64,000 bases of DNA from Mizuhopecten yessoensis (Eukaryota). Below are positions 5,243 to 39,014 of the stretch, one piece after another (the stretch's first letter is position 1; each line of letters opens with the position of its first letter). The position numbers and the translations under genes are program-made. A model generated the notes under the pieces. It did not search any database. It saw nothing but the letters and a program-made list of their open reading frames with translations, and was not told the DNA's origin. Location of the stretch: the NCBI RefSeq assembly GCF_002113885.1, contig NW_018403356.1, forward strand, positions 189,670 to 253,669, in the 5' to 3' direction.

Positions 5243-6476
5243 AGAAAGTGTGATCTATGAACAGATTATCATGCGTTCCAAAATTTAACGCAAAACATAT
5301 TGAGACATCGGGGAATGCAGACTGGTTACACTCTAATATACATGGCTTACAGAACTCCTGGTGGTTCTTCTCGAACAAAAAGTCAAGGTGTTTTCTAGAT
5401 GGAGATTCATCAGATTAATAGTATCTGAAACATGGAGTTGTGTCCCAGTATTCGAGATACAGAGTTGTGTCCCTTTACTATTTACTTAGGCTGAATTGAT
5501 GGTCTGTACTACTCCCCTGGAATGTGTGACATGGTGTATGGAAGTCGGTGTATGTAGAGGTACAATGGATAAGTTGTAGCAGTAGCACCTCATTTGGTCA
5601 TCAACTCGTAGTAAATCATCACATTCTTTCATTTCTCATTCTTTTATTATATGAGGATTGGATTCGGTCCTTGTATCAGAGTCAAGAATGTTTTCAGTTA
5701 ATGAAATGAGGTAATATTTCATCTCAAAATCATGCATAAAAACCTTTTCATTAGAAATATTACAAATAAAAGATGCAGCAGTCCGTTTCAGGAAGTACTA
5801 TTTGTACTCAGGAGTACATGTCTATGTTACATATTGTGTATGTTTTGATATAGAAAAATGTGAATAAAAAAAAATTGTCAACAAATTAAAAAAATAGTTG
5901 TTTCAAATACATTTATATAAAAGTTACCAAATATGTTCTGGTCATAAAAGTTATCAAATATGTCCTGAACATAAGGAGACTAAAGTGTTTGCTTTTATTT
6001 TTTACATCTGTACATCATACGTATTCGAATAAGGTAGTTCAAAAAAGAATCAATTGATTGTAAAACTGAAGACGCAAGAATGAAGGTGCTGGAGAGAGGA
6101 GGAGGCTGCTGAAGCAAGCTAGTGACTTTAAAACGTTCAACAACCCTAATTGCTGTTAAGACTTGCTATTTCCAGCATTAAAAGTATCAACCCCTACTGT
6201 GAAACCAACCAACCCTCCCTGTTAAAATTTCTTTCAAAATTGCCATTTNGTACAAAGGTGGGCGCCAAGATCCCTCTGGGATCTCTTGTTAAACAAACTG
6301 CTGATATAATCAGATTGAACAATAGACATAACCTCAATAAAGTTAGGTACAACATACATACAGTTAAATAGAATAGCATGTACATTATAGTATTATTTAC
6401 TAAGAATTACTGTAATAGCTTACCATAAAGAATTGGTTGGGGGAGGGCAATTAAGTAGCTTTATGTATGTAAATAT

Positions 6477-11411: not shown

Positions 11412-11648
11412 AGTGCCTGTGATCACGAGAAGTCAAAAATATCAAAATAACAATCCGAGATAGCCAGAAACAATAAACTACGTTGACATAACTTCAAACG
11501 ACTGTCAGATTAAATCTAAATTGCACTCACCTTCCTACCCGATTACATCACGACGTTGATCCCAAGACCACACCAACCAGCCCCTGTATCCTGTTTATAA
11601 GACCAGTGACGCAGTAGGTTAGCTCGTGTGGTCTCTGGGTGTCCACAC

Positions 11649-11733
11649 CTACCCCATAGCCCTGTACACAGGGACGGCGGGGTCGCTACGGCATGGGCCC
11701 AAAAACCGGGAACGGTACCCCAGGTATGAAAAC
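11649..11733 (-). CDS. Candidate terminal exon tX (phase-2 entry: FSYLGYRSRFLGPCRSDPAVPVYRAMG*)
   Basis: acctccag| acceptor in a GC-rich island; fits after the 21513 exon (AT|G = Met). Other frames are possible. Confidence 0.55.
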
Positions 11734-14700
11734 CTGGAGGTTACGAAGTAAGCGTTTGACACTAAGGTGGGTTGATTTGCACCTTGGACAGAATCCACTT
11801 CCAGTCAACCATCTTGAGACGATGACTGGGCTCCGCCTATTTGGCCTGTTTGCACCGTTTATATACCCTGGTGATTGTCACCATATACGTCACCTTCCAA
11901 AAATAACACGCATTTTCGTTGGTCATGAATTTTGCATAGCTTGCTTGATTTTCGAGATTACCTGTTGTTTTCGTTAGATTATTATGAAACTGGAAGGGTA
12001 TCCCGATTGAATTTTGCTTACGTAGGTATATTGATACTAAATCCTCACGTGATCACGTGAGGTATTTTGCTGTGTAATCGATATTAGCGTATACAAACGT
12101 CCCTCGTTGTGAAGAACTGCTGACACATGTACTATACACGGCTGTAATGTACACACACACTGTACACATACTATATATCCCAGTCCCCTGTACTTTCATT
12201 TAATCTATTTTTCTGAGACACCACTAGATTGTTGGAATTCAGTAGAAAAAAAACCAACCACAGTTGCTCCATCATTAACTGTGATAGATTAATTAAACAT
12301 ATGACATAATGTGGATGCAAATATTGTATTTTTTTACACCGTTATATATAATTCTAAATAGACCAACGAACAACAGTCATGCTTTGATATGAATCAATTC
12401 TATTCAATCATTATATACATATATACATAATAATTGCAGCTTGGTTTAAGTTAGTTTCTCTGAAAGCATAAGTGCTACACCATCCAAACTTGGACCATAG
12501 ATGCATCTTAGGTAGTACAACTCAGCCCATGCATCAAAAGCTGGATGCGGCCTACCTGTTATGGTCCATTGACTTTGTCAGCATCTCCATCAACAATAGT
12601 TTTTGTGTTTTAGTTAGTTTCTCTGAAAGTATTACCCCAACCACACTTGGACCATAGATGCATCTTAGGTAGTACAACTCAGCCCATGCATCAAATGCTG
12701 GATGCGGCCTACCTTTTATGGTCCATCAATTTTGTCAGCATCTCCATCAACATTAAGTTTTTGCATTTAAGTTAGTTTCTTTGATATGAGCATTGATGGT
12801 CAAAGCGGGGCATAGGCGAGACATACTTTACAGTTTCTCCCCAATTGTTAAGAGCTGCATTTTTGCTTTAAGCAATGCAGATAACCAATGTTTTCTCATA
12901 TGTTGACATGTCTACTAACTTACAAGGAGTTGCTAAAAGATATACCTGTCATTTAGAAAGACTGAACACATACATATATATAGATTGAAGAATATCTTTC
13001 TGGTAATACATTGGTGTTTTAAATGGAACGATGTTATGCTCTGAACCCCGCCCAATATGAGTATATGTTGACTTTTGAACGGCTCCAGCTTCTATTAATT
13101 CCTATATACACTGTGTTTAAATGTTGGTAATGCTTCATATTCCTCCGATTCATGTGTAGCTTTGATCGATATGAACAAGTTTACACAATTTGATTCTAAT
13201 TTTCTAGGATTTGCAAAATTTGATTTTTATTTACTAGTTTTTTAAAAATATTTTTAAACACTATCACATTCCAAGGAATAAGCATCCGATGACTGCCAGT
13301 TTTTTTTTTATTTATTTAAATGTTGACTAAGTCCCTAATTATTCTCAAATCATCGCCCACTTTCCTTACACATTTGAATATTGACTGCTTTTTTTTGTAA
13401 TAAACTAAGGGTTATAGGCCACATAAACATGAAATGTATTACAGTAAAAACTGATGTTTAATTAACTGAAACCTGTTTTTCATTAATCTCATCAATACTT
13501 GTCATTAGACAACAGTGTAATAATTATTTTAACATGCTGAGTACTGTTAATATAGAAACCATTATTCTTCAAATTCGGATATAATATTAAATTACTATTG
13601 GTATTCAAAGTTGTGATTATGACTTCAATGATGATGTCGTTAACAATCACCCATGGCATTTACAATGCTATAATGCTCATTTGTGTGCGGTTGGTTTATA
13701 TAAATGCAATGTTATTAAAGTGTTTATACGTTTAATATTTGTCCTTTTTATTGACAATATGGTACACATTTTACAGTGCTGTATCCTGCTACATCGTGTG
13801 GTATCTCAATACTGGTTAGCAGACATCAGCCGAGTTCCAAATTAACCAAAACCAAAGAAATATTGATGTGAAAATATTTTAATTGCATTTCAAATATTTG
13901 CGTTAGATATCCAATAAATTACAACATGGTACTTCCTTGACTAAGTCTCAACATCAATAAAATAATGTACAATAGAGTAACAAATTAAGCAATACAATGT
14001 ACATGACATACACGAAAGCTTTCTGTAGCTTTTGGTTTTAAACCAATAGGACGGACTTGTTAATACGACTTCAGCATTTGGATAAACAGTATTGCGTGTT
14101 CAAATCTAGAGTTGTCTACCTTACGGTAAAACACATTTTCAGATATTTCTAACTGTATTTTGATGTTATGCTTGAAGGTAAATTCTGACAACGACATGAA
14201 TTTATTCACTCACAAGTATTCTACAATGGTGATAAATTATATCACATTTACCGCTCAGTCTAAAATCACGTAGTAAAACAAAGAGGAAATATGTCGTTCC
14301 TCTTTAACAACAAAAATCGAACAGTGTCTTAGAGGGTACTAGTTTGCAATAGACATTACTTTTACTTTTGTATACAGCGGCTAGGCAGCGTACATTTACT
14401 TAAATAGGATTCCAACTTAGAACAGAATAACACATATGAAAATTAGCTGAATAGACTGTAAACCAACTTTATCTATAGATAACTATTCGATTCAAATAAA
14501 TAACACCGATCAATGTTGAATGGAGAGTTTTACACATGTACGCTCTAATGGTGTCGCACCATATGTATATAGATCGTATGCCTCGTTTGTGTATCCGTCA
14601 GCACAATGAAATTCAGCCCATGTCACACTATCACAGACGCTAACATCTCGGTACCTTAGTCACCTGTCCACAGACCAGAGACCCCAATACAGGTCAACAT

Positions 14701-17700
14701 GTTAATAGCCAAGCCCCACCTGTCTGGCTTTCAGGCGAAAACGGGATGCCACTGAAACAAACCAAAATAACACGCTTTAAACCTTTCATTCAAATCACAA
14801 TACAGCAGTATTTAAATTATATTTTCCCTGATTTCTTTTCTTTGAAGCAAGAGGTGAACTGTTGCATATTATTATCTTTAAACATTAAAATCTCATTGTG
14901 ATGAAACACATATTTTGTATATCTGATCTGATCACGCTCAGCTATTATAAAAGCTATTTTATTGATGATATAATAACGTGTAAATGTTCATATGTTAAAT
15001 TCTTGCATATAAACGTCATCTGAACTTCTAATAAAGAAATATGTCACGGACAAGGATACTATCTAAGCTATACAAGTTCATTAGTATCAAACACTAGAAC
15101 AAGATGACATGAAAATCTGCATTCGTGAAAAGAATCCAACCAATACACGTTTAATATTATCTCGTGACATGCAAAATCAAAGTAGCATGCTACTATAACC
15201 ATTGTTTGCCCTTAAATGTGATGTTTTAATATAGTTATACATTTTCTGTTAGCAAAACCATTAATTTACATTGTTATTCGTTTTGATTGATATCGTTAAA
15301 ACACTAACCAGAGGGAAATTATAACTACATATTAAAAAGAAATTAAACCGATATATCAATGTACATGTGTCAAGTAAATGTCAGGGGCAATTACAGTTAT
15401 GTAATGTACATGTATATTGCAATGATTACCAAACGTAATTAGACTGATGGCTGAAACATTCCTTATAAGGATTAGACTGATGACTGAAACATTCCTTATA
15501 AGGCTTTATTAAACATAAAGAGCACTCTCCATTATTATTTGCAACATCACAATGCCATTTAGTAACACCATACAATCAGTAACACTTAGTTATACAATTA
15601 CCTTCAGTAACATTCAGTATCATTATACCTTCATTAACATTCAGTATCATTATACCTTCATTAACATTCAGTATCATTATACCTTCATTAACATTCAGTA
15701 TCATTATACCTTCAGTAACATTCAGTATCATTATACCTTCAGTAACATTCAGTATCATTATACCTTCAGTAACATTCAGTATCATTATACCTTCAGTAAC
15801 ATTCAGTAACATTATACCTTCAGTAACATTCAGTATCATTATACCTTTAGTAACATTCAGTATCATTTTACATACAATAACACTCGGTAGCATTATTCAT
15901 TCAGTATTTTCAATAACATTCAGTAACATTATACATTCAGTTACATACATGCTTGCTTCTCGGTCATGCTATGAAATTAACAAACTTCCTGTGAAAACAA
16001 CATTTTTTATGTTTACATTATTAAACCATAAATAATGGATATATATATCACTATCACACACTTTTTCAAGTATATACATGTGTCACACATCGACAGTGCG
16101 TGCGTAAACACGTGGGGCGCAGGTTAGGATAAGCACACATCAAATATACATTTGTCACATACGGCTTAAAATATAGGATATACTTGTGAGTATCACACCC
16201 AAGTAGGGGCGGGGATTAACGCTTCCCCCGGGACACCAAGCCAACGCCCGCTAGCCCCGAAGGACTTCCTCAATCCGACTGAAAGTTAATTTGCATAAAA
16301 CGGGTGTAAATATGCATAGATAGTGTGTGTATTAGAAAGGTAACACACTCATTAAGTATTGACCTAAGTGGTAATATATCTCTGTTCATTAGTTGATGCT
16401 AATATTAATTCTATAGTTCTCAAGATTTAAAGAGTTGGTATTCGGGTGATATTTGAATTTGTAAACAACTGTTCTCGTGAATTATTGTGAATTGATATTT
16501 CTGGAGAAATATTAATGATTCCTCAGGGTATAATGCATTGTGTCAACATGATAAAGGCACAGAAGATGTTGTATATCCATGAAAATGAACTGCTATATGG
16601 ATGTCATAATCAGTTGTAACCAATGACAATGCTTTAGAGTCTTAGCTACCAATAAAATATTACTTGGTGATATCAGTACAGACAGAGAATAGTTCACTCG
16701 TGGAAGACGTAAACGAAGACAAAGCGACCCATCACCAATGTTTGTATCACGTAATGTTAGCGCGTATTAATGGCGTTATGATTAAAATGTATTACATGGA
16801 CTATATGGAATCTGTAAACAACCACACGAAAATGACATGTTTTACGACAATACTTGTAATAATGGCAACAACGAAAACAGTATACCAGTAATACCAAAAT
16901 AATAAACACTCTCTATTTACTCTGTTTCAACATAATTAATAAGACACTTGATTATTACACGAAACAGTCTGGTAAACCCTACTCCCAGATACAAATCTAC
17001 AAAAATGAAACACAGTTACCGATTTTTGTTTGGAGCGGACTAAACTGTCCCACAACGTTTCATCATGATCTCGACCTAGATTTCCTGTAATACACACATA
17101 ATCAATATCGTAACCTCGATCGTCTGTAGTATACAAAGACATCAATATCTTGACCTAGATCTTCTGTAATACACACGTACATCAATATCGTGACCTAGAT
17201 CTCCTTTAATACACACAGACAGCAATATCATATCATAACCAATGTCTCCTGTAGTACACACAGACATCAATATCTTAACCTATATATTCTGTAATACAAA
17301 CACACATCAATATCGTGACCTAGATCTCCTTTAATACACACAGACAGCAATATCATCTCATAACCAATGTCTCCTGTAGTACACACAGACATCAATATCT
17401 TAACATATATATTCTGTAATACAAACACACATCAATATCGTGACCTAGATCTTCTGTAATACACACAGACAGCAATATCGGGAACTAGATCTGCTGCTTT
17501 ACACAAAGACATTAATACCATAACCTAGATCTTCCGTAATACACACAGACATCAACATCGTGACCTTGTTTTCTGTAATATTCACCAACATCAATATCCT
17601 GACCTATATCTTCTGAAATACTCACGAACAAGATATTGTGTAAATAATACCCAAATATCAATAAATATATGATGAACTAGATCTTCAGTAATTCACAAGC

Positions 17701-20700
17701 ACATCAATATCGTGACCTCCACACGACCTTCATACACACACAAATTAAGTACCATGAACTAGATTTTCTGCTTTACAAACACATCAATATCGTGATCTGG
17801 TTTTCTGTAATATACACAAACATCATTACCATGACCTAGATATCCTGTAAAACACGAAGACATCAATTTTGTGACCCAATATCGTAGCCTAGATATACTG
17901 ATATATACACAAACTGACCTAGATTTCATTAAATACACACAAACATCGATATCGTAGCCTATATATCCTGTAAAACAAACCTCTATATCGTGACCAATAT
18001 GGCAAATGAAAACGATCGACCGAGGGTCATTATAACGAGGGTTTTCTGTAGTGACATACTCATATAGCGATATCGAATATTCAAAACGATAAGTACGGAC
18101 TATGTTTATACATGATTTTCATTTACTTAACGGCACGTAAATACATAGTAGGATTGGAAATGGATACATGGAGTATTAGAAAGGACACGTGTGCGTATAG
18201 AGTAAGGCATAAAATGGTAGAAATACCTAGGTTCTAGACGAGGCTGTAATGAGAGGTACACATTCACAGAGGAGAAGCAGATGAAGAACCTTTACACCGA
18301 TATATATATGCAAGTCAATCACCAGAACGTCTTCTCATCAGTATAAAGATGGATCATAACGAGTGAAAAGATATTATACAGATACTACGCAGAATATCAA
18401 GAGAACATATGGCAGGGTAAATAGGTTCTTTGATTATTAAGCTTATTGTATAATAATAAAAAGATTTATAAAAGTCTCACTTTCTTTTTACCTTTACTTT
18501 GCATCACGCCCTTACTATTCCAGGAGAATAGTTTACTGCCAATAATAATCATATATGCATACATAACATCATTCTCAGGGAACAAAGGCACTATCTTTAA
18601 CACAGCTCTGTATGGATAGAGGTGTACCGACTTAATCAAATTCGACAGAAACTAATATGTACTGCTTTATTTTTTTTACCAAAAAGCGTAGCACCTCAGT
18701 ATATAATTTACCTTGTTATGTTAATATATCTGTTGACTTTACTTATATCGTAGCGAGACTTTTCCCGTTGATGTCTATCTCGTAGGTTGCTAACATTGCC
18801 TTTTTAATAATAAATATTTTAATATTGTAAATATCTAATATATAAAGGCTACGCCATCATTCAATATAATTTCTCTTTTTTTGTATTATAACTTAGGTTG
18901 CATCAACTACCTCACTCACGATTTATTTTAAACGTGTAAAAAACGAAATCTGAGAAAAAAAAGGACAGTCGTACATTTGTCACTCTTTGAAGTATTTGTG
19001 GGGGAAAATAATGCACATGTGCACTAGAACAAATGGTGCTTTTTGGGAAAACATTTTGAAAACGTCTAGTCTAATCAAACTTACGGTCTATTGGTTTTTG
19101 TTCCTGATACCAGTATTTGAACCCATTCTTGGCTTTATGATTAAAGGCGGTATCCTTTGAATTTTTACGATTTGGTGAGGGAGCTCGCCCTAATGGTCTG
19201 GACTGGCCGTACCGTGGCAGCATAGTGGGATTGCTTACTGTCATGGGGTCTGTCATCACGTTATCCACCTGTTTGACGGTCCCTTAAATGAGTTCATAAA
19301 CCATATTGAAAAATAAAACATTCAATGAAAGTATAATATGAAATGAACAAGCATGTTATGTTCAATATCTACTGAACAATATGCGTTAAATGTGTGTATT
19401 TTCCTCATGACATCTGTTTTGTCTAGCAATTTATTACCGAGTTTTGTAAGCTAATAAAGATACATTTATATCGTTGGTATGTTTACTTATATGTATATCT
19501 GGCACTGCCCAATAATACACACTCGTACAATTAACCTACCTTCTATAAACGTTAAATTACTGCCAGTGTTAGCTACGCATGATTCTACATGTCTCCAACG
19601 GCCTCCTGCTCTTCCCATTCTGTTTAAGTTTCTGTCAAACAGAAAGTTTCGATACATATTAATGTACACTTTAATATTTGTTCTAGCTGTATTTAAGGGT
19701 ACACTATCTCATTAAATGGTATAGGGTGAAAAATTGCTCTTAAATGTCTTTGGGATCAAACAGAAATACTAATAGAAGAAAACCATAGGAAAGGTGTTTT
19801 AAATTTAAAAAAAACAACATAACTTTCTTTCTCTGCAAAGATTAATCCATATCAAAACATTATTTTCAAAGTTTAGGAAAATCATTATCAGACTTAAGTT
19901 AATTAAATAGTAAGTATGATCTGCAGCTTCTACAACACCGCGACACTATAAAGATCAAGGGCAGGTATCGGAGAGAGAACAACACATTACAAGTGTCACC
20001 GAGAGAGCAACGCATACAGATGTCTATAAGGGAGCAACAAATGACAAATATCTATGAGGGAGCAACGAATGACAAATGTCTGAGGGATCAACGAATGACA
20101 AATGTCTATGAGGGAGCAACGAATGACAAATATCTTTGAGGGAGCAACGCATGACAAATGTCTTTGAGGGAGCAACGAATGACAAATACCTTTGAGGGAG
20201 CAACGAATGACAAATGTCTATGAGGGAGCAACGAATGACAAATACCTTTGAGGGAGCAACGAATGACAAATGTCTATGAGGGAGCAACGAATGACAAATA
20301 CCTTTGAGGGAGCAACGAATGACAAATGTCTAGGAGGGAGCAACGAATGACAAATGTCTTTGAGGGAGCAACGAATGACAAATACCTTTGAGGGAGCAAC
20401 GAATGACAAATGTCTATGAGGGAGCAACGAATGACAAATGTATTTGAGGGAGCAACGAATGGCAAATATCTATAAGGGAGCAACGAATGACAAATGTCTA
20501 TGAGGGAGTAACGAATGACAAATGTCTAGGAGGGAGCAACGAATGACAAATGTCTTTGAGGGAGCAATGAATGACAAATCCCTTTGAGGGGCAACGAATG
20601 ACTAATGTTTATAAGGGAGCAACGAATGACAAATGTCTATGAGGGAGTAACGAATGACAAATGTCTAGGAGGGAGCAACGAATGACAAATGTCCATAAGG

Positions 20701-23700
20701 GAGCAACGCATGACAAATGTCTATTAGGGAGCAACGAATGACAAATATATATGAGGGAACAACGAATGACAATATCTTTGAGGGAGCAACGAATGACAAA
20801 TGTCCATAAGGGGGCAACGAATGACAAATGTCTATGACGGAGCAACAAATTACAAATGTCTTTGAGTGAATGGCTCTAAAAGAGCAATTGATGACAAATA
20901 TTTATGCAAGAACGATTCGTTACAAATGTTTTCGACAGATCAGCTCGTGACAAATGTCTCTGAGAGAGTGACTAATGACAACTGTCTCTCGGACAGAGCA
21001 ACATAGAGATGACAAGTGTCTATAAGAGAGCAACAATTTAACATTATACTGGACTTACGGTTTTAGAGATTGGCATATGTAGTTTATAAGATTGAAGATT
21101 TCATGTAGAATACATGTATATGAAAAACATTTTGTACTTTTTATATGTACGTGGGACAACACTAATCTCACAAAACAGTCTGCTGTGGCTTGCTATTCAA
21201 AAGTGCAAAGACATTGTTTGTGACGTTACACAGAACTGAGTGTTGCTATCACCGATAATGTGCTAACCGTTCATAATCAATAGGCGTGTGGACTAAAGTA
21301 CAAAGCGAACTTATAATAACGTCAACTCAGGACAAGGATATCGTGATTGAATTTTAGAAAAACACTCATGACACCCATTGTTACTTTAACTTATACCATT
21401 TGAACCTTCATAAGTAACTACAGTCGAGTTTAGTAAGCTTGTAAAAAGTCAAACAAAGTAAGGCTCTATATAACCTGTAAGTCTTCACCAGCTACACAAC
21501 CACGATACGTACATGTTTGTAGAAGGAACGCGAGATTTCCACAGTCTGTTGTAATACTGCTTGGTGAAGGGATCCATATCTTCTGCTCCAAAGCCCGCAA
21601 ACGTTGCTCCTCTCTCTATAGGAGGGGGGCGGGGACATGGCCCGGGGGTGTACATGGCGTATGCTTTGTTTCGATAATCCTGCTGGGGGTCAGGCTAGTG
21701 AGAACAAAACGTGAATGAACACAGACCCTTCCATTACAATTCACCTTAGTTTTCAATGTTTTCTATTGCTCATGTATATAAAATACCTGGTCTATTCTTT
21801 TTTTGTGTTTATCAACTCAAAATCGTTTATAAGTATGTTTATATATTCTCTAAAGCTGACGTGTACATCCTTTCAAAACAATGAACTTGACAAAATACGT
21901 TATATATGTTTTAGGAATAACATGTTTGACTTTTTCATACACACTTCCGTCGATAAAAGGTTCACAAGAACAATCATTTGAAGGTTCATAGGAATACATG
22001 ACAAATAGTAACACAGAAACGTATGAAATCATTGAAATGTATACAGAAACGTATGAAATCATTGAAATGTATACAGAAACGTATGAAATCATTGAAATGT
22101 ATACAGAAACGTATGAAATCATTGAAATGTATACAGAAACGTATGAAATCATTGAAATGTATACAGAAACGTATGAAATCATTGAAATGTATACAGAAAC
22201 GTATGAAATCATTGAAATGTATACAGAAACGTATGAAATCATTGAAATGTATACAGAAACGTATGAAATCATTGAAATGTATACAGAAACGCATGAAATC
22301 ATTGAAATGTATACAGAAACGCATGAAATCATTGAAATGTATACAGAAACGCATACTTTGATGTCGATTATGCAAGTCTTAATTTTAAAATTATTATAAT
22401 CACGAGTTTTAAAAGAGAAAACCCTAACACAAAATACATGAGTAGCTGTGAGATATTACAACAATAATTACAATATATCCGAACTGGATAATGTTTATAA
22501 TGAAACCACTGCTGAGCACGTTGGCGTCGTTAAAACAAGGGAATCATACATGTGGGTAAATGCTTTAAAAAAAACATGATCATCAGCACATGAGTTACCA
22601 TATAGCATAATCTCCTCTCGTGTATCTATCATTCACCTTAATAGAACTAATCAATATTACTTTGAATGGACGAAAACATTAAGCGCTGAATTGCACTACA
22701 CGAAAAAAGCCTATCTTTGATCCAAATCACAATTTAGCGCATAGCTGTACTTTACACAAAACGTACACTTAATTCGTGTCATTCAAGAATAATTAGCGCA
22801 AACAATCATTATTTATTAAAAAGTCACATAGCTTGATTCCTTCAAAAGATTCATGGGCTTGTCACATACATATTTTCTGTGAATTTAGCTCATTTTATTC
22901 CATTGCGAACTGTCTTACTTATACAAAACATCACACTTGAATCATCCTTGACGACACAGAAAATATTACTGTACAGAACTTAAAAGTTTACCATGGATGT
23001 GACCTCGGTTGCAAACTCTTCAATTAGCATGCATCCTTTATTACCTGCAGTTGGATATCGATATGATCACTTATGGCTAGGTTGGCATATCGCCATTAAT
23101 ATAGAATATTTAAACATGAATGCATATTTTGAACTGATCGACTTTCCCCAAGCATGAAATTGTCATCATGGTACGATAGTTTCGTTGACATTGCACTTGA
23201 ATTTGACATAATATTGATTAAATTTACCTCGACATTCAAATTGATAAGGGGAAGCTTTCAACAAACATCTAGCATCAAATAAAACTATGTATTTGGTTTA
23301 AGTGATAACAGTATGCATATAGCATGTACCACGACATAACAAAATCCAGCATCTAGCAAAAATGTGAATTTATAGCCTCAATACTTAACCAATTAGATTC
23401 TAGCTTGTTCCCATTGGCTAATCATCAAGTAACTGTGTGATTGATGACTGTGAACAATCATTCATTAAACATGTAGCAAGACAAAACCGTTTTATTTTGT
23501 AAAACTGTGAATATATAGCCTCTCCACATAACAAATTAAATTCTAGCCTTTTACCAACAGCTAGGTGATTACCCGACGTGCTTGTCTACTCCGGACGCCT
23601 CCCATCAGTAGACCATAGCGCGCCTGTATACCAACGTATCACAGAAGTGTTATGCTATACCTTGCCCGTATTCATGAAACCGTTCTCATGCTCAAAAACT

Positions 23701-32700: not shown

Positions 32701-35700
32701 TGCATGAGTATCGTGTATCTTAAATTGTATTAAATATGGATAACAAATAGAGGTATATAGACGTGTTATCTTATTAATACATATTCAATGTTGTGTAGTA
32801 TAGTTTTGTCCTTACATTTTATCACATTGTGAAAGCATTTTTGGCCGTTTGTGGACACTTTCACGTGTTATTTTAGCATAAAACATCAATACAATTATAT
32901 CCCCATACTCTATGGTTATGTCATGCGCCAGAGATACACTACAGCTGTGGCAGAGATGCCTAACAACCAACTGATGAACAGGCTTTTAAATACACATCCC
33001 TCCCGCAAGGTATCTTACCTGTCACATATATTGTACAGTAAACGCTTGATATATTGTTATCATTTGCCAAGAGAATTTTCGTTTAGTTAGAAAGAGTTTG
33101 GCGATACAGGGTAATGTAATTGAAAAAAAGAGGACTTTAAACTATTGTGCTTGAAAATATTCGGTAGCTGGGGCGATCCATTAAATAAGGGATATCATTT
33201 ACTCATTTTACCCCTTCAGTCAAGCATCTACTACAAGCATCGCTACAGTCTTTATTAAAGATGTTCGCAGCTAAAATTAATGTATTTATATCTTCTGTCA
33301 AACAGTTGACTGCTAACAGTCATTAAAATATGAACTACACAAGGAAAGTGTACGTCCTTTACCATGTTTAAATTGCTAAATTACATTTTCTAAAGAAAAT
33401 ATATAAAATGATTAATCTATATATTCAATCAAATTAGTGTTCTACAAGTGTTAGATAAATTTTGTTGCAAGTAAAAAAAAAAGAGACAATATATATTATT
33501 GATTTGAAATATACAGCAGTTGGGTGATTTCCAAAAGGGTAGATCAAAGCAGGTGTTTTATTGCAGTGATAGTAAGTCTCCACCTCCTGGTTATAACCAT
33601 ATTTACATAGCAATTAGAAAATGTGTCTAGACTTAACAATAAACATACCTTAAGTCTTCTTCCAGTTTGAAGGTTACTCTCGGCACACTATAATATCTGA
33701 AGTGTTTAATAAAACTTGCACAATATGGTCCTAACAAAAATCGTTAATACAATAAATCAACAGCCATATTTCATATGTAGCCTATGTATTAAGTAACAAT
33801 ATATCAGTCTAAGTGCCTTCGCAATTATAACCAGTAGTAGACTGGGTGTTATCGTAGTCGACCTAACGGACTGATGTATATAAAAACTAACTATAGATAG
33901 GTTAAACTCGGAACATTCCTAATGAAACAGGAGCCTGTTGTATGACCTATGTCAAAGTCTTTTCTGTTCATTTTTCGATATTGGAATATTGTTAGTACTA
34001 TGTCTGGTAGCGACTAGGAAACCTGATCTGTCTTGGTGTAACACGTTTTAACAATATATATATATACCAATGGATAGGTAACTTGTAAGTATGCATGTAT
34101 TATAACATTGAATAGTCTTTACATAATATAACACATTATCCTCTTCACGTGGTAACAGAATAAAAATGAGTACCATAATATAAACCTTAATCCCATCCGC
34201 GTGGTAACTTTTAAAATAGAAGTAACATCATCACCATATACCCCATCCACGTAGTAACTTGTACAAGAGAATTAATATTGTATAACCCTTTACCCCCTCC
34301 GCGTGGTAACTTGTACAAGAGAAGTAACATTGTATAACCCTTCACCCCTCCACGTGATAAAATGTACAAGAGAATTAACATCATATAACCCTTAACCCCT
34401 CCACATGGTAACTTGAACAAGAGAATTAACATCATATAACCCTTTACCCCCTCCACGTGGTAACTTGTACAAGAGAATTAACATCATATAACCCTTTACC
34501 CCTCCACGTGGTAACTTGTACAAGAGAAGTAACATTGTATAACCCTTTACCCCCTCCACGTGGCAACTTGTACAAGAGAATTAACATCATATAACCCTTT
34601 ACCCCTCCACGTGGTAACTTGTACAAGAGAAGTAACATTGTATAACCCTTTTCCCCCTCCACGTGGCAACTTGTACAAGAGAATTAACATTATATAACCC
34701 TTTACCCCTCCACGTGGCAACTTGTACAAGAGAATTAACATTATATAATCCTTTACCCCTCCACGTGGTACAATGTACAAGAGAAGCAACATTATATAAC
34801 CCTTTACCCCTCCACGTGGTAAAATGTACAGGAGTAACATTATCTAGTGTTTTTTATCAACTCTACGTAGTATAATTTACAATAGGATTTTTGTCATATA
34901 CCGTTATAGCCCTTTACCACCTCCAAGTGATAAATATGCTACAGGAGGGGTATTACTCGTTACATATAGGCCTTTACTACCTCGTCCGAAACGGGTACCG
35001 CTGTGTGGTATAAAACTTTTTCAATTTTAAAAATGCATTCTTACTATTATAAGACTAAAGATAATATTTGTTTATAAAGGTTATTCAAATAATTGTTGAT
35101 TGCAATGAATTTAGAATCTTTTAACAAAACCTCGAAAATAAATCAGCCAGATTTGTATAGGGATTTTATAAATAATCAAGTCATTCAGTTTAGATAGGTG
35201 AAGCATTTGTCACAGGTGGTACAGCCAGCAATAAACTGTTACAAAGTTGCAATGATCATCTCATCAAAACTGAAAAACTTAAATAAGCGTCCTATTAATT
35301 ACAGAATGCTAAGGAAAAGACCAAGGGAAGATTTACAAAGAGACTCTTAAAAAAGTACAAGAATAAGACTAGGTATTGCGAAAGAGTACATGGCGCATAA
35401 ACGGTAAGAGTAGGTAATTTGCATATGCTGCACATACACTATCAAAGTGGATAAAATATGACACCCAGTACATCACACTCACACCATACAGGGTGGCCAT
35501 ACCCTCATAAGGGTGGCCATACCCTCTGACAGGGTGACTATGCCCTCATACAGGGTGGCCATACCCTCATACAGGGTGGCCATACCCTCAGACAGTGTGA
35601 CAATACCCTCATACAGGGTGCCCATACCCTCAGACAGGGTGACTATACCCTCATACAGGGTGCCCATACCCTCATACAGGGTGGCCATACACTCATACAA

Positions 35701-38700
35701 AGTGACTTTACACTGTAGATAAAGCTTAACACTGTCGCATGATATTAACATGTGTTAAATAACAGCTAAACATATGTGTTAAAGACCAAACACTAATACA
35801 GCTCATGTTTACACAAGATTAAGCAGGGAAAGCAATAATATATACAATATATGAAACTTTAAATAACCCCGGGTGATCGAAGAGCTGTCTCTGGGTGAAA
35901 AGACGTAAAGTAATGTATTATGTATGCATGAAGTAAATAAACTGACAATGGCTGTCAGAACATAATGGTGAGCCATTCCGTGATTATACCTATCGTAACA
36001 GTTATCTAGTACGTGGTTGTTAACGTGTTACCTATTAGCACGTCGTATCAAGTTTCTATGTCTACATGTAGATGTACTTTTATCAATGAACGTATATAGA
36101 AAACCGAAAATGTTACATATCAAATAGTTCCGCAGAAAGGACATGTTGTACGCTATATATAGGACAACTTTCTCAACTAGGGCTTTCTTCAACACTACTG
36201 TCGTAAAGCATTGTAAACTTACAGCAGTTACTATTATTATTATATAATATAATACCAATACAAAACATATCGAAAAGGAATGTCATTTAATACCGATTCA
36301 AATAATATCCCAAAATAATGTCATGTTGTAACAATATAAATAGCATCGTAATCACAAGATAATGATATCTTATATGAATACAAAACATATCACAAGACAA
36401 TGCTCTCTAATACCAATAAATATGACATTATAGGAGAATGTCTTAGATATCAGAGGTTTACTGAATAACTATACTTAATAACGTAAGTTATGTACAAGGT
36501 ATATATGTTTTTTCATGGATTGTATAGATAAATATCACGTTCAATTGAAATACATATCAAGGTAAACTTTCATTAATATACCAGATAATCTTAATAAAGA
36601 AACGATGAAAGGCAAACCTTTATAGCTGTGTACCTTGGAAGGAGCGCGTGTAGTATACCCCTATAAATCACAATAAAGTGTGTTTAATATAGGACAGTAG
36701 TACCGACTTACACATCATAGCCCCCGCTGTGTCCTGGTCCATACACAGTATAGTCCTCCAACCGGGACCCAGACCTAGAACCCGGCATAGTCACTCCTGT
36801 CAGTTATCTCCGTCAAATGACGGTGTTATTCGAACGATATCTGTTTGTATTGATAGGAATCAATATGAACACTCAAATAAATAAATGTTATACTTGTTTC
36901 TCCGCACTAGTGACAGTCACCATGGAAACAGCAAGTACTCTCCCTTTATCTTGACTTGTGTGTCATGAGTAGTAGTCAGGTAGGTAGTGGAAAACTTAAA
37001 ATTGACAACCGCTATACAAATTCCCAATCGAGCGATTATAAACGTCTCAATACAAGTTGTGAAGAGTGTAAACAGATCAGCCCATTTAGCGCGGAAAGGG
37101 TAGGTAAGGAATTTGAAATGGAAAGTATTTGATTTAACTGGGGATTATCCGTCCCAGACTTGGGTAGCTCTTTTCAATATCCATATGTCAATGTAAGGTC
37201 ATTACCGGTAATGAATAAAAAGGAGCAATTTAAAGACTAAAGTGATAGTTTACGATCGAAATCTACCTATAGAAACAGTAATAGAACGCTGCCTACTCGG
37301 ATATCTCTCTTAGGTGTATATAGGCCAATCTTTATCAACTTAAATTGCATTCGACTTTTCGTCATTGTAGACTAAACACTGTGTAGAGTTTAGTTTTCAT
37401 GTGTATTTAGAATAAGAGTGGCGCAAAACATTCGTTCTTTTCATTAAGAGTTTAATCTATTAAATTGGCTGTGGTCCTTTACCAAATATACCAGACGCAA
37501 GTTCTTATGGAATTAAACGGTGCTGAGAAGTTGCTCGTCTGGGGAGTGTTGGGATTTAGTAGGTGGAGGTGTTAGAGATCCCGTCTATGTGTATAGCCCC
37601 TATGGACTTTAATTGATTTTAAGATATATAGACTTCTTGAGACAACGCTGGCCAGTTATTTGTATACCTGTCTACTGTCAGGGGTAATTGATTGTACATA
37701 CCAATAATTACCTGTTCGCCAAACCAAATCCCATTATCTACGGCATGGCGACGGGTAAAAATCCCGCTTCTGTTTATCTATCTCTTATACATTGTGTTAA
37801 TATATTTATAGTGTGAATTGATTTCTCTACATAATACTAGTATACTGTCTGAATGAATCCACAATACTATAACAACGTTAATGAACAAAAAGTGGTTTAA
37901 TATAGATATACAAATCAATTCTTTTATAGGTTTAGAATGGAAAGTTATATAACTTCGATAAACCAGAAAATGTTATTGGTTTCAGAGATTAAACTTAGAT
38001 ACCACTAAGAAATATACGATAGTGACATCCGTACGCGTAATGCCAGGCGTTTCTTACACAGCTGCTGTCCGACTCTCAGTTATACACACCAACTTATTAT
38101 CTAAAAACAATAAATATTCCCGTTATATAAGCTGTCTTTCCTTTTCTTCGAGTCCAAAACAACCAAAAGGTAATGATTGATAATTAAGCGTGAATGTTTG
38201 GACTACAGCTACAGGTGTTTAAGAACATTACCAGATAGTGACAAATAGATACATAATGTAGAACTGTGGCCTGTATGGACGAAATAAAGCATTGCTGTAC
38301 GGAAGCATCGGGTAACGTGGTTCCCGAGTATATCAAACACACACAGTATTAGGATAGCACGTCACTCTATTTGGCTCAATACAAAAATAATGTTTATTGT
38401 AGACAACATTACAATCTTATGAAGTAGGTGATTCAACGTTCAGTTAAAAGACAATTGATGATAAAACATAACAGTTTGATTCATCTGTGGAATTTATCAT
38501 CATGATTTGGAAAAAGTGATATGATCTAGGATAACCATAGAACAGTTCCTGCATGAAAATTAAATAAAATGAATGCATAGTGAATGGTCGTAGTAATATT
38601 TTGATAAATAAGTAAATGCATATTTCCGTATCAGATTTCTGAAATCCTTTCTTACTCTCGTAATGTGAAGTACCATAAATAATTACAATACGCATGTGCA

Positions 38701-39014
38701 AGTAAGATCAAAGTAAAACAAACATTAGGATAGGGTATTATAGTGACAATAAGACCTATAGCCATATACAAAACGGCATTTGATCTATGGAAGTTTGTTG
38801 AAAACTCAGATATTTTCTGTTCATGAGTAAAATGTTTGCTCCATTGTCGAATTAGACATTCATCAATTGGTGTTGTTTGGCTGTATAAAAACTTGTTTTT
38901 CCAATTATTTTTTGGGAAAAGTACAATAACTAGATTTTGGCCGTCGTTTCCTCGTATGCCATTAGAACTAAATGCTACTAACCTGTGACTGAATATGGGT
39001 GGTAGGGTGGTCAT
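11649..39014 (-). CDS. Uncharacterised multi-promoter, alternatively spliced gene for a small Pro/Arg/Gly/Tyr-rich protein (overall coding span)
   Basis: Chain of GC-richer islands with GT-AG boundaries and compatible phases: first exons 38983-39014, 36712-36788, 27996-28150; common exon 27015-27195; cassette 23573-23623; 21513-21694 or 19085-19268; terminal 16193-16278, 14702-14751, 11649-11733. Minus-strand AATAAA at 10527-10532. Confidence 0.8.
12446..12835 (-). mobile_element. HINE-like fragment with two ~160-bp tandem units
   Basis: Near-identical ttagtttctctgaaag...catctccatcaaca units at ~12446 and ~12609, a third start at 12767, then terminal-like aagcggggcataggcgagacatactt. Confidence 0.55.
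14702..14751 (-). CDS. Candidate alternative terminal/internal exon (phase-1 entry: ASRFRLKARQVGLGY*)
   Basis: tttggtttgtttcag| acceptor followed by a GC-richer island; internal cag|gtgggg is a possible donor. Confidence 0.4.
15598..15868. repeat. 27-bp minisatellite, ~10 copies (taccttcagtaacattcagtatcatta)
   Basis: Direct periodicity. Confidence 0.95.
16193..16278 (-). CDS. Terminal exon tY (phase-1 entry: GLRKSFGASGRWLGVPGEALIPAPTWV*)
   Basis: aactttcag| acceptor; only the phase-1 frame is long and it matches the phase-1 donor at 19085. Confidence 0.65.
17060..17995. repeat. Degenerate 40-bp minisatellite with a 125-bp higher-order trimer
   Basis: catcaatatcgtgacctagatcttctgtaatacacacaga units; 17180/17305/17430 repeat at 125 bp. 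Confidence 0.85.
18127..18243 (-). CDS. Possible further alternative exon (phase 0: PRLEPRYFYHFMPYSIRTRVLSNTP...*)
   Basis: Long pyrimidine tract ending ctctcattacag|; phase-0 frame open for 38 codons. Confidence 0.3.
   Translation of the reverse strand, partial: PRLEPRYFYHFMPYSIRTRVLSNTPCIHFQSYYVFTCR
19085..19268 (-). CDS. Middle exon Y, 184 nt, phase 0 to 1 (VDNVMTDP...FKYWYQEQKPID)
   Basis: tcaaacag|GTG GAT ... ATA GAC C|gtaagt; matches ORF 19071..19268. Confidence 0.75.
19970..21035. repeat. 28-bp minisatellite, ~35 copies, decaying at both edges (gagggagcaacgaatgacaaatgtctat)
   Basis: Periodicity 20222/20250. Confidence 0.97.
21513..21694 (-). CDS. Middle exon X, 182 nt, phase 0 to 2 (PDPQQDYRNKAY...RLWKSRVPSTN)
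   Basis: gttttgttctcactag|CCT GAC ... AAC AT|gtacgt; open frame across a GC-rich island. Confidence 0.75.
22011..22354. repeat. 30-bp near-perfect minisatellite, ~11.5 copies (acagaaacgtatgaaatcattgaaatgtat)
   Basis: Identical 60-nt lines 22021-22290. Confidence 0.98.
23573..23623 (-). CDS. 51-nt symmetric cassette exon (ARYGLLMGGVRSRQARR)
   Basis: ggtatacag|GCG CGC ... CGT CGG|gtaatc; phase 0-0. Confidence 0.5.
23660..23908. mobile_element. MITE with ~55-bp TIRs
   Basis: cccgtattcatgaaaccgttctcatgctcaa / ttgagcatgagaacggtttcatgaatgcggg. Confidence 0.85.
27015..27195 (-). CDS. Common exon, 181 nt, phase 2 to 0 (YPSDAYEAEYLPRDG...SRQEFGTQ)
   Basis: tttccttttttgatag|A TAC ... ACA CAG|gtatta; core of ORF 26979..27266; strongly GC-rich relative to flanks. 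Confidence 0.85.
27256..27570. repeat. 82-bp tandem repeat, ~3.7 copies, each unit bounded by an inverted ccatcac/gtgatgg
   Basis: Units start at 27261, 27343, 27425, 27507. Confidence 0.93.
27996..28150 (-). CDS. Proximal alternative first exon (MQYSGNDRD...PIMYFVPSP), ends phase 2
   Basis: Open from ATG 28150 (further in-frame Mets) to CCA AG|gtaggt. Confidence 0.65.
28918..29275. repeat. 69-bp minisatellite, ~5 copies
   Basis: tcataatgacaacaaggtactcgtacaacaagtag... at 28918, 28987 etc. Confidence 0.95.
32106..32119. promoter_or_regulatory. RFX X-box-like GTTTCTACGGTAAC
   Basis: Palindromic X-box-type motif 20 bp from a - strand gtgagt donor at 32085; possible further non-coding first exon. 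Confidence 0.4.
34130..34842. repeat. 51-52-bp minisatellite, ~14 copies, carrying CACGTG
   Basis: ccacgtgg at 34453, 34504, 34556, 34607, 34659, 34710, 34761, 34812. Confidence 0.95.
35485..35700. repeat. 21-bp minisatellite, ~10 copies (catacagggtggccataccct)
   Basis: Direct periodicity; each unit has an internal agggt/accct inverted pair. Confidence 0.9.
36634..36660 (-). CDS. Candidate 27-nt microexon (GILHALLP), phase 2-2
   Basis: gatttatag|GGGTATACTACACGCGCTCCTTCCAAG|gtacac. Confidence 0.4.
36712..36788 (-). CDS. Middle alternative first exon (MPGSRSGSRLEDYTVYGPGHSGGYD), ends phase 2
   Basis: ATG 36788 open to GAT GT|gtaagt; X-box ~130 bp upstream. Confidence 0.7.
36916..36929. promoter_or_regulatory. 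RFX X-box GTCACCATGGAAAC
   Basis: Matches the 14-bp X-box consensus GTNRCCATGGNAAC; 128 bp upstream of the ATG at 36788. Confidence 0.65.
38983..39014 (-). CDS. Distal alternative first exon (MTTLPPIFSH), ends phase 2
   Basis: acaATG ACC ... CAC AG|gttagt, preceded by a GC-rich leader. Confidence 0.55.

What the first reader, a model, noticed from the sequence alone, without database searches (positions are those of the whole stretch)
11649..39014. Hidden mix-and-match gene: at least 3 alternative N-termini, one shared exon, several alternative C-termini
Seen: short GC-richer islands on the - strand, mostly below the ORF-track cutoff, each with proper splice signals. Three ATG-initiated exons (39014, 36788, 28150) all end in phase 2, which is what the common exon at 27195 needs (an optional 27-nt phase 2-2 microexon also fits). 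Downstream are a 51-nt cassette, two ~183-nt middle exons and 3-4 terminal exons. Products are ~160-220 aa, low-complexity P/R/G/Y/S-rich, with no domain I recognise. Inference: one 28-kb locus producing a combinatorial family of small disordered proteins.
Basis: partly seen in the sequence, partly recalled or inferred. Interest (0 to 1): 0.75.

Follow-up and report, generated by a model that had tools for sequence, protein, structure and literature searches.

The report
Many-isoform scallop gene, already annotated

Summary
The finding is real and mostly read correctly, but it is not hidden. The window is Mizuhopecten yessoensis. The minus-strand exons belong to RefSeq gene LOC110449703, "uncharacterized protein", with nine isoforms of 267-298 aa.

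Exact peptide mapping gives three alternative ATG first exons, each ending two bases into a codon. They join a common 181-nt exon. There are optional cassettes of 48, 12, 21 and probably 51 nt, a constant three-exon core, and at least five C-termini.

RNA data confirm junctions 36712>27195, 27015>21694, 38983>27195 and 33649>27195.

The first two match annotated isoforms of other scallops; the third matches scallop, oyster and mussel isoforms.

Errors: the two "middle exons" are consecutive and constitutive, with a missed 92-nt exon between them. Products are about 270-300 aa, not 160-220. Acceptor 19268, the 27-nt microexon and an exon at 11649 have no support.

A 65-nt cassette switches the reading frame of the last exon, and both readings are conserved.

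The family was found only in bivalves. It has no Pfam or PDB match and is predicted disordered. Function is unknown.

The parts
38983..39014 (-). Alternative first coding exon A (MTTLPPIFSH + 2 nt); GT donor after 38983
   Evidence: Exact match to RefSeq isoform X9, P0011. The junction 38983>27195 is in contigs of runs X1 and X2. Pecten has MTTFPPIDSHR.
36712..36788 (-). Alternative first coding exon B (MPGSRSGSRLEDYTVYGPGHSGGYD + 2 nt)
   Evidence: Isoforms X1-X8. In run X21, 46 reads join 36712 directly to 27195. The MPG...GYD(V/I) N-terminus is conserved across bivalves.
33649..33696 (-). Optional 48-nt cassette, phase 2-2 (YYSVPRVTFKLEEDL)
   Evidence: Present in 7 of the 9 RefSeq isoforms; X6 and X9 lack it. 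The junction 33649>27195 is in X1 and X2 contigs. All 46 X21 reads skip it.
27996..28150 (-). Alternative first coding exon C (MQYSGND...HVTFNISKMSYNQHHPRNTSNPIMYFVPSP + 2 nt); not in this species' RefSeq isoforms
   Evidence: Intact ATG open frame with a GT donor. It is 82% identical over 51 aa to the annotated N-terminus of Pecten maximus, and also matches Argopecten and Ylistrum. RNA depth in X21 is about 3, against about 35 on the common exon. No spliced read was listed.
27015..27195 (-). Common 181-nt exon (YPSDAYEAEY...RQEFGTQ); it takes the 2-nt overhang of any first exon or of the 48-nt cassette
   Evidence: Present in all nine isoforms. Depth is about 35 in X21. The exon alone hit RefSeq protein P0001 at E 1.9e-30.
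25544..25555 (-). Optional 12-nt microexon (IHRQ)
   Evidence: Isoform comparison and AG/GT borders. Equivalents are ALRK, AFRK and AYRK in other scallops and DNVQR in oysters.
24480..24500 (-). Optional 21-nt microexon (QWDYLKQ)
   Evidence: Isoform comparison and AG/GT borders. Equivalents are HLDYLKQ in Pecten and YGDYLRP in oysters.
23573..23623 (-). Candidate 51-nt cassette, phase 0-0 (ARYGLLMGGVRSRQARR); not in this species' RefSeq isoforms
   Evidence: AG/GT borders. It is 75% identical over 12 aa to the annotated Argopecten cassette DRYSLLMRGLRSRSR, at the same position in the protein. This species has no direct RNA proof.
21513..21694 (-). Constant core exon 1 (182 nt; ...EDMDPFTKQYYNRLWK...)
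   Evidence: Present in all isoforms. In X21, 67 reads join 27015 to 21694. It carries the invariant D-P-x-T-x-x-Y-Y-x-R motif. AlphaFold2 predicts a helix at residues 155-167.
19540..19631 (-).
   Evidence: Exact mapping. This is the most conserved block of the family.
19085..19282 (-). Constant core exon 3 (198 nt; TVKQVDN...AKNGFKYWYQEQKPID + 1 nt). Its donor at 19085 feeds all the alternative 3' exons.
   Evidence: Exact mapping shows the acceptor is at 19282, not 19268.
18504..18535 (-). Alternative terminal coding segment (L)NYSPGIVRA*
   Evidence: RefSeq isoform X7, P0007. Pecten has LNYFPGIVKA and Argopecten LNYLPGIIKA.
18227..18243 (-). Alternative terminal coding segment (P)SSRT*
   Evidence: RefSeq isoform X8, P0008. 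The same C-terminus occurs in Pecten.
17020..17084 (-). 65-nt cassette ((R)NLGRDHDETLWDSLVRSKQKS) that sets the reading frame of the last exon
   Evidence: Present in isoforms X1-X4, X6 and X9. Its length is 2 mod 3. The DETLWDSLV motif is conserved in Argopecten, oysters and Pinctada, and in altered form (DETLLDSLV) in Mytilus.
16193..16278 (-). Alternative terminal coding segment (L)GLRKSFGASGRWLGVPGEALIPAPTWV*; not in this species' RefSeq isoforms
   Evidence: AG acceptor in the frame that fits the donor at 19085. It is 93% identical over 27 aa to the C-terminus of Argopecten P0066 and 87.5% to Magallana. The same class occurs in Mytilus, Dreissena, Mya and Potamilus.
14702..14751 (-). Last coding exon, read in two frames. 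After the 65-nt cassette it reads WHPVFA* (to 14731). When joined directly to 19085 it reads (L)ASRFRLKARQVGLGY* (to 14702).
   Evidence: RefSeq isoforms X1 and X5. Both readings are annotated in other scallops and in oysters, and Mytilus has frame-consistent counterparts. The RxRARxVGxGY class also occurs in Mya and Dreissena.

Best explanation
**What it is.** This is one protein-coding gene on the minus strand. It is RefSeq LOC110449703 of the Yesso scallop. Its coding part runs from 39014 to 14702.

**How the isoforms are built.**
- Three alternative first exons (A, B, C) are presumably driven by separate promoters. Each starts with ATG and ends two bases into a codon, so any of them can join the common exon at 27195.
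- B, at least, can join through an optional 48-nt cassette.
- After the common exon come optional in-frame microexons of 12 and 21 nt, and probably a 51-nt cassette.
- Next come three constant exons that carry the only strongly conserved motifs.
- The donor at 19085 lies one base into a codon. It is joined to one of several 3' exons, giving at least five C-termini.
- A 65-nt cassette acts as a frame switch. With it the last exon reads WHPVFA-stop. Without it the same exon reads LASRFRLKARQVGLGY-stop.

**The products.** The proteins are basic, hydrophilic and largely disordered, about 27-34 kDa.

**Likely function (inferred, not shown).** The constant core binds a fixed partner by folding on contact. 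The exchangeable ends carry short linear motifs that set location or regulation according to tissue.
For: **Gene and exon map**
- The common exon alone retrieves RefSeq protein P0001 at 100% identity.
- The protein cluster holds isoforms X1-X9 of LOC110449703.
- All isoform peptides map exactly to AG/GT-bordered exons in the window.

**RNA junctions**
- In run X21, 46 reads join 36712 to 27195 and 67 reads join 27015 to 21694.
- In X1 and X2, the loose-end consensus at the acceptor is exactly the mixture of exon A and the 48-nt cassette.

**Conservation of the alternative parts**
- Exon C is 82% identical to the Pecten N-terminus.
- Terminal exon 16278 is 93% identical to Argopecten and 87.5% to Magallana.
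- Both readings of the last exon are annotated in scallops and oysters.
- Mya has six C-termini.

**Family range:** the hits that carry an organism name are all bivalves.

**Disorder and lack of known domains**
- AlphaFold2 mean pLDDT is 43 and 49 in two runs, with a single helix.
- GRAVY is -1.07.
- There is no Pfam or PDB match.

**Copy number:** the gene is single-copy in this genome.
Against: - No spliced read for exon C (27996>27195) was listed in the four runs examined. Contigs there run unspliced across the donor.
- That the first exons have separate promoters is inferred from their position only.
- Nothing tested here bears on the proposed function.
- The candidate motifs (RVTF in the 48-nt cassette, W-x-x-L in the 65-nt cassette) are not invariant. 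Ylistrum has HVTV and Mytilus has LLDSL.
Confidence: 0.85

Rival explanations
1. The two roughly 183-nt exons (21694 and 19268) are alternative middle modules, each paired with its own terminal exon. Junctions such as 27015>19268 would give products of 160-220 aa.
For: A join 27015>19268 would be in frame: the skipped 182 + 92 + 14 nt total 288. There is an AG just before 19268.
Against: - All nine RefSeq isoforms, and all the orthologue isoforms I inspected that cover this region (a few truncated models aside), contain the three core exons in series.
- These exons hold the invariant motifs of the family.
- All 67 X21 reads leaving 27015 go to 21694, with agreement 0.99.
- The two exons show no detectable similarity to each other.
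Confidence: 0.03
2. The isoform variety is mostly splicing noise or over-prediction by the annotation pipeline. On this view only one or two forms matter biologically.
For: In run X21 a single form dominates: B joined to the common exon joined to 21694, with no cassette and no microexons. RefSeq models are automatic predictions. Contigs retaining introns are common for this gene, both here in X1 and X2 and among oyster transcript ORFs P0085-P0090.
Against: - Most alternative pieces are conserved as peptides between bivalve orders. Examples are exon C, the 65-nt cassette with WHPVF, the GRWLGVPGEAL end, the RFKARxVGxGY end and the two microexons. Noise exons would not be kept over such distances.
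- Different runs use different upstream exons: B in X21, A and the 48-nt cassette in X1 and X2.
Confidence: 0.1
3. The protein is a muscle thick-filament accessory protein, a bivalve counterpart of insect myofilin. Myofilin is also small, largely disordered and made in several isoforms.
For: The three nearest clusters in the ESM Atlas feature search were all Myofilin (PF15929), with scores of 0.77-0.79. Myofilin is described as small, mostly disordered and present in isoforms that differ at the C-terminus (PMC9820631).
Against: - Those scores lie in the range that shuffled proteins often reach, according to the tool's own calibration.
- No PF15929 match appears in any family member, even at E up to 10, or anywhere in this genome.
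- Myofilin's one well-conserved part is an N-terminal 'LKG' domain. Here the N-terminus is the variable part, the sequence contains no LKG, and conservation sits in the C-terminal half.
Confidence: 0.04
4. The protein is a regulated docking subunit. Optional exons would add or remove known short motifs: a PP1-type RVxF site (RVTF in the 48-nt cassette, HVTF in exon C, NVVW in the oyster counterpart) and an Atg8-type W-x-x-L site (DETLWDSL in the 65-nt cassette).
For: Pattern matches in P0009 are RVTF at residue 32 and ETLWDSL at residue 279. Similar strings sit at comparable places in the oyster and scallop alternative exons.
Against: - Such short patterns are common by chance.
- Ylistrum has HVTV and Mytilus has LLDSL, so neither motif is invariant.
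- Among the isoform sets inspected, the 48-nt cassette appears only in this species.
- No binding test is possible with these tools.
Confidence: 0.07

Closest known systems
RefSeq gene LOC110449703 (Mizuhopecten yessoensis), isoforms X1-X9 (XP_021352452.1 to XP_021353169.1; GenBank OWF56840.1)
   Same: It is the same locus. All nine proteins map exactly onto exons in the window. They cover first exons A and B, the 48-nt cassette, the common exon, both microexons, the three core exons and four C-termini.
   Different: The annotation lacks first exon C (28150-27996), the 51-nt cassette (23623-23573) and terminal exon 16278. The gene is named only 'uncharacterized protein'.
Orthologous uncharacterised genes of other bivalves: LOC117323851 in Pecten maximus, LOC105346164 in Magallana gigas, LOC111128803 in Crassostrea virginica, LOC125650960 in Ostrea edulis, LOC143069662 in Mytilus galloprovincialis and LOC128209028 in Mya arenaria
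   Same: - They share the same constant core motifs.
- Scallops and oysters share the three classes of N-terminus.
- They share the classes of alternative C-terminus.
- They have many isoforms, up to 18 numbered in Ostrea.
   Different: - Mya and the unionids show only the type B N-terminus.
- Oysters have extra C-termini (RLELSVYY, LWAIEDIKNHE, QYIPDMDQSVSEHLTE) that I could not find in this window.
- The full-text search found no paper holding any of the four locus numbers, five protein accessions or two UniProt ids I tried.
Genes with several promoters or first exons and several 3' terminal exons that encode disordered proteins. This is a general, well-known kind; the statement rests on my own knowledge and was not tested here.
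   Same: Alternative first exons with matched phase join a common exon. Alternative last exons and small in-frame cassettes produce a combinatorial set of products.
   Different: Here most variable modules are conserved across bivalve orders, and the family has no known domain or function.
Cassette exons whose length is not a multiple of three, which make a downstream exon be read in a second frame. This dual-frame use of an exon is a known phenomenon; the statement rests on my own knowledge.
   Same: The 65-nt cassette (2 mod 3) changes the last exon from LASRFRLKARQVGLGY-stop to WHPVFA-stop.
   Different: The truly overlapping part is short, at six codons plus a stop. Both readings are conserved. 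WHPVF is kept in scallops, oysters and mussels. The RxRARxVGxGY reading is also kept in Mya and Dreissena.
Insect myofilin (Pfam PF15929)
   Same: It is small and mostly disordered, and comes in isoforms that differ at the C-terminus. It was the nearest neighbour in the language-model feature search.
   Different: There is no profile match. The conserved part of myofilin is N-terminal (the LKG domain), whereas here it is the C-terminal half.

Membership tests
Bivalve LOC110449703-like family (unnamed, uncharacterised) | Significant full-length sequence similarity to the annotated orthologues | tested here: met
   E-values run from 1e-133 (Argopecten) to 3e-31 (Mytilus) with P0009 as query. The profile search extends the family to Potamilus, Mya, Dreissena and Mactra at E 1e-38 to 1e-47.
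Bivalve LOC110449703-like family (unnamed, uncharacterised) | Invariant core motifs: DPxTxxYYxR, RxGRAGGxWRH...G....F..G, and the nearly invariant GFKYWYQE.KP.D | tested here: met
   All motifs are present in window exons 21694-21513, 19631-19540 and 19282-19085. The invariant columns are listed.
Bivalve LOC110449703-like family (unnamed, uncharacterised) | Alternative C-termini attached after the ...KP(I/M)D boundary | tested here: met
   There are five C-termini here, four from RefSeq and one from orthology. Oysters have six to seven and Mya has six.
Myofilin (PF15929) | Match to the Pfam profile at or above its cut-off | tested here: not met
   No hit at E up to 1 or 10 in the 14 aligned family members scanned. 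There is also none in the whole genome. That last search had no positive control, as the tool itself noted.
Myofilin (PF15929) | Conserved N-terminal domain of about 35 residues with an invariant LKG (PMC9820631) | tested here: not met
   The N-terminus is the variable part here, and no isoform contains LKG.
Myofilin (PF15929) | Location in muscle thick filaments | not testable with these tools
   Run identities and tissues are coded, and no proteomic data are on hand.
PP1-docking regulators (RVxF motif) | A conserved [RK]-x(0,1)-[VI]-{P}-[FW] motif that binds the PP1 catalytic subunit | tested here: inconclusive
   RVTF occurs in the 48-nt cassette. Related strings are HVTF in exon C and NVVW in oysters, but Ylistrum has HVTV. 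Binding was not testable.
Dual-frame (frame-switched) terminal exon | The same nucleotides are translated in two frames in different annotated transcripts, and both peptides are conserved | tested here: met
   Isoforms X1 and X5 map to the same exon, 14751-14702, in two frames. WHPVF and LASRFR(L/M)KAR are both annotated in scallops and oysters. The Mytilus pairs (WHPVFG with LASSLRI... or LAPSLWI...) fit a one-base shift. The consistency argument for Mytilus is my own back-translation.

The most novel reading that the evidence does not exclude
This would be an ancient, bivalve-only disordered hub protein. Its invariant core docks on one partner. Its ends have been kept as a fixed repertoire of swappable modules since the common ancestor of scallops, oysters, mussels, unionids and clams. 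In the pteriomorph bivalves (the scallop, oyster and mussel group) a 65-nt cassette would have been added later, recoding the ancestral last exon into a second conserved C-terminus. Its role might be structural, in the unusual bivalve muscle or cytoskeleton, somewhat like the small thick-filament proteins of insects.
Probability: 0.15. Interest if true: 0.5.

Novelty: new member of a known kind. Interest (0 to 1): 0.3.

Why it matters
For genome annotation, the result shows three conserved coding exons that the current RefSeq models of this scallop lack: a third N-terminus, a 51-nt cassette and a fifth C-terminus.

For biology, it marks an uncharacterised family found so far only in bivalves. 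The family keeps a highly invariant core and a conserved set of exchangeable ends, including an exon read in two frames. That makes it a reasonable candidate for a lineage-specific adaptor worth an expression and interaction study in oysters or scallops.

It does not open a long-standing question. Multi-promoter, multi-terminal-exon genes are common.

Tried and rejected
- **Paralogy between the two 'middle' exons or among other exons in the window.** A tblastn search found nothing significant.
- **Domain and fold searches.** Pfam on single exons, on full isoforms and on 14 family members found nothing. PDB profile searches found nothing. Two AlphaFold2 runs were too low in confidence to justify a fold search.
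- **Myofilin lead from the ESM Atlas.** Rejected as membership on the profile and on the defining N-terminal domain.
- **First profile search.** It suggested restriction to pteriomorph bivalves. This was corrected by a second profile led by the Tegillarca sequence, which found unionids and heterodonts.
- **Extra oyster C-termini and an exon near 11649.** I found no match in the window. The 11600-12000 stretch is not a dispersed repeat.
- **A second exon elsewhere in the genome encoding RMGRAGGSWRH... (contig C1046).** I could not assign it to a gene. No other family exon lies within 35 kb, and neither Pfam nor the Atlas gave a lead.
- **Rfam on 11000-40000.** Nothing.
- **Literature.** Searches by four orthologue locus numbers, five protein accessions and two UniProt ids found no paper. 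One paper search was badly framed and useless.
- **The look-up of encoding contigs was closed.** I therefore could not fetch orthologous gene DNA for codon-level tests.
- **Mapping scripts.** My first spliced-mapping scripts failed or timed out. I replaced them with exact peptide look-up.

Full report
**Identity of the locus**

The window is contig C29:189670-253669 of a 988-Mb genome in 82,659 contigs. It hit one protein at 100% identity (P0001, E 1.9e-30). The only other hits were two weak matches.

The cluster of P0001 holds nine proteins of 267-298 aa, all named [quoted passage not shown]. The gene is therefore real and already annotated, not hidden.

I built and searched no joined spliced model of my own. 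Exons were handled one by one by reference. Full-length comparisons used the database proteins returned by the tools.

**Exon map**

Exact peptide look-up of the nine isoforms in the three minus-strand frames, followed by reading of the borders, gave the structure below.

| Element | Coordinates | Length | Note |
|---|---|---|---|
| First exon A | 39014-38983 | 32 nt | MTTLPPIFSH |
| First exon B | 36788-36712 | 77 nt | MPGSRSG... |
| Cassette | 33696-33649 | 48 nt | optional, phase 2-2 |
| Common exon | 27195-27015 | 181 nt | in all isoforms |
| Microexon | 25555-25544 | 12 nt | IHRQ, optional |
| Microexon | 24500-24480 | 21 nt | QWDYLKQ, optional |
| Core exon 1 | 21694-21513 | 182 nt | constant |
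| Core exon 2 | 19631-19540 | 92 nt | constant |
| Core exon 3 | 19282-19085 | 198 nt | constant |
| 3' exon | from 18535 | | LNYSPGIVRA-stop |
| 3' exon | from 18243 | | PSSRT-stop |
| Cassette | 17084-17020 | 65 nt | sets the frame of the last exon |
| Last exon | from 14751 | | read in two frames |

- Every exon has the expected canonical signals: AG and GT on internal exons, a GT donor on first exons, an AG acceptor on terminal exons.
- Exon GC is 0.51, against 0.35 for the region.
- With the 65-nt cassette the last exon reads WHPVFA-stop. Without it, the same nucleotides read LASRFRLKARQVGLGY-stop in another frame (isoforms X1 and X5).

The coordinates 39014, 36788, 36712, 28150, 27996, 27195, 27015, 21694, 19085 and 16278 are all real starts or borders. 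The phase argument also holds: the three ATG exons each end two bases into a codon, and the common exon supplies the third base.

- **Exon C, 28150-27996.** It is 82% identical over 51 aa to the annotated N-terminus of Pecten maximus. The same N-terminus is annotated in Argopecten and Ylistrum.
- **Terminal exon at 16278.** It reads (L)GLRKSFGASGRWLGVPGEALIPAPTWV-stop. It is 93% identical to an Argopecten C-terminus and 87.5% to a Magallana one. The same class occurs in Mytilus, Dreissena, Mya and Potamilus.
- **A 51-nt AG/GT cassette at 23623-23573** (ARYGLLMGGVRSRQARR). It matches the annotated Argopecten cassette DRYSLLMRGLRSRSR at the same place in the protein.

- The two "~183-nt middle exons" are not alternatives. 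Together the three carry the invariant motifs of the family.
- The acceptor of the third core exon is 19282, not 19268.
- The optional phase 2-2 exon is 48 nt, not 27 nt.
- Products are 267-298 aa, not 160-220 aa.
- I found no support for a coding exon near 11649.
- The two middle exons are not detectably similar to each other.

**RNA evidence**

I had one call, on 22500-28499, with four runs.

- **Run X21 (raw RNA reads).** Depth on the common exon is about 35.
  - 46 reads run from 27195 into the exact end of exon B, skipping the 48-nt cassette.
  - 67 reads run from 27015 into the exact start of exon 21694, skipping both microexons (checked letter by letter).
- **Runs X1 and X2 (contigs from two studies).** Each has two contigs that leave the acceptor.
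  - The reported consensus is exactly the alphabetical tie-break mixture of the ends of exon A and the 48-nt cassette.
  - The predicted agreement of 0.633 equals the reported 0.63.
  - Junctions 38983>27195 and 33649>27195 therefore also exist.
- **Run X24.** It shows no expression of the gene.
- **Exon C.** Depth in X21 is about 3, which is above the nearly empty neighbouring intron bins. No 27996>27195 joint was listed, and contigs cross the donor unspliced. Use of exon C in this species remains unproven.

One is contradicted in the sample seen (27015>19268). Two rest on orthology only (27996>27195, 19085>16278).

**Family and range**

The word-based searches found annotated orthologues in:
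- scallops (Argopecten, Ylistrum, Pecten);
- oysters (Magallana, Crassostrea, Saccostrea, Ostrea);
- Pinctada, Mytilus and Tegillarca;
- with a profile led by the Tegillarca sequence, also unionids (Potamilus, Sinanodonta) and heterodonts (Mya, Dreissena, Mactra).

All the hits that carry an organism name are bivalves, and all named hits are "uncharacterized" or "hypothetical". These searches are limited by length window and shared words. "Bivalves only" is therefore likely but not proven.

The gene is single-copy in this genome. The full-text library returned no paper for the four orthologue locus numbers, five protein accessions and two UniProt ids I tried.

**Conservation of the modular design**

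- Scallops and oysters share three N-terminal classes: A-like with LPPI, B-like MPG...GYD(V/I), and C-like MQ... with an xV(T/V)(F/W) string.
- Mya and the unionids show only class B.
- Alternative C-termini are present everywhere. Mya has six.
- The GRWLG(V/L)(P/Q)GE(A/S)L class and the RxRARxVGxGY class reach from scallops to Mya and Dreissena. The first also reaches the unionids.
- The 65-nt cassette with the WHPVF reading is seen in scallops, oysters and mussels. A related cassette-type end occurs in Pinctada.

I infer that the RxRARxVGxGY reading of the last exon is the older one. The frame-switch cassette would then be a later addition in the pteriomorph bivalves.

The two microexons are also conserved between scallops and oysters. 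Argopecten uses the longer cassette where the others use the 7-residue microexon.

**Nature of the protein**

- P0009 has a pI of 9.7 and a GRAVY of -1.07. P, R, G, Y and S make up 41.6% of it.
- AlphaFold2 with 14 and then 22 aligned sequences gave mean pLDDT of 43 and 49. It predicts one helix over PFTKQYYNRLWK (pLDDT about 77) and a weak hairpin.
- There is no Pfam family and no PDB relative by profile.
- The protein is thus largely disordered, with three sharply conserved linear blocks.

**The myofilin lead**

The ESM Atlas feature search put insect myofilin clusters first, but at 0.77-0.79, in the range that shuffled proteins often reach. The Pfam myofilin profile matches neither the proteins nor the genome. 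Myofilin's defining conserved N-terminal LKG domain (PMC9820631) has no counterpart here. I do not file this protein as a myofilin.

**Mechanism**

- **Shown:** the architecture, the phase compatibility, several junctions and the conservation of the modules.
- **Inferred:**
  - the first exons have separate promoters;
  - usage differs by tissue, as hinted by different upstream exons in different runs;
  - the constant core acts as a fold-on-binding docking region, with the ends as carriers of short motifs.
- **Candidate motifs:** RVTF in the 48-nt cassette and W-x-x-L in the 65-nt cassette are leads only, because neither is invariant.

**Tools and limits**

- The three single N letters in the window (1715, 6249, 54922) lie outside the gene and were left alone.

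**Verdict**

The combinatorial idea is right. Several exon details and the product sizes are wrong, and the gene is already in RefSeq. Novelty is modest: an uncharacterised family, found so far only in bivalves, of a familiar kind of gene, with a neat conserved frame-switch at its 3' end.

Noticed in passing
window 23664-23900 (intron): This is a miniature transposon of about 240 bp with terminal inverted repeats (tgcccgtattcatgaaaccgttctcatgctcaa ... ttgagcatgagaacggtttcatgaatgcggg). The genome has more than 1,800 candidate copies, at 72-82% identity among those scored. RNA reads from many loci pile up on it, with many mixed loose ends.
   Followed up: partly
G000:C1046:607917-608003 (+) = L003:4918-5004: This is the only other place in the genome that encodes GRAGGxWRH. 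It is an AG/GT-bordered exon reading (R)LRMGRAGGSWRHVKEVLQAGGARIVFVDG, with the same intron phases as core exon 2 (profile E 4e-5). No other family exon lies within 35 kb, and there is no Pfam hit. The gene it belongs to is unknown.
   Followed up: partly
window 22500-27197, runs X1 and X2; oyster proteins P0085-P0090: Contigs run unspliced from the common exon into the downstream intron at depth similar to the exon. Oyster transcript-derived ORFs read through the same donor (…LGTQVRLL…) and through the donor after …KPMD. This points to intron retention or abundant pre-mRNA for this gene.
   Followed up: no
window 45900-53130: There are retrotransposon remnants here. Reverse-transcriptase and integrase-like ORFs lie on the minus strand (47.3-50.1 kb) and RT-like ORFs on the plus strand (50.6-53.1 kb). 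A perfect 44-nt tandem repeat of 16 copies sits at 51690-52396.
   Followed up: no
window 6476-9448: A long tandem array: 93 copies of a 32-nt unit at 91% match.
   Followed up: no
window 17073-17876: A degenerate tandem repeat with a period of 40 to 165 nt lies in the intron upstream of the 65-nt frame-switch cassette (17084-17020), and its 3' edge overlaps the first 12 nt of the cassette.
   Followed up: no
window 11622-11816: This stretch has one copy at 79% identity elsewhere in the genome (C4099:2117051-2117246). The small contig C78227 holds an identical copy of 11600-12000, probably an assembly duplicate. Rfam has no match and its role is unknown.
   Followed up: partly
Argopecten isoforms P0012 and P0066-P0072: The annotated Argopecten type C N-terminus is extended by about 48 residues upstream (MISVNPFVFGYCLVTNRGG...). 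This resembles the translated 5' leader of exon C in this window, so it is probably an upstream in-frame ATG in the leader rather than a real extension.
   Followed up: no
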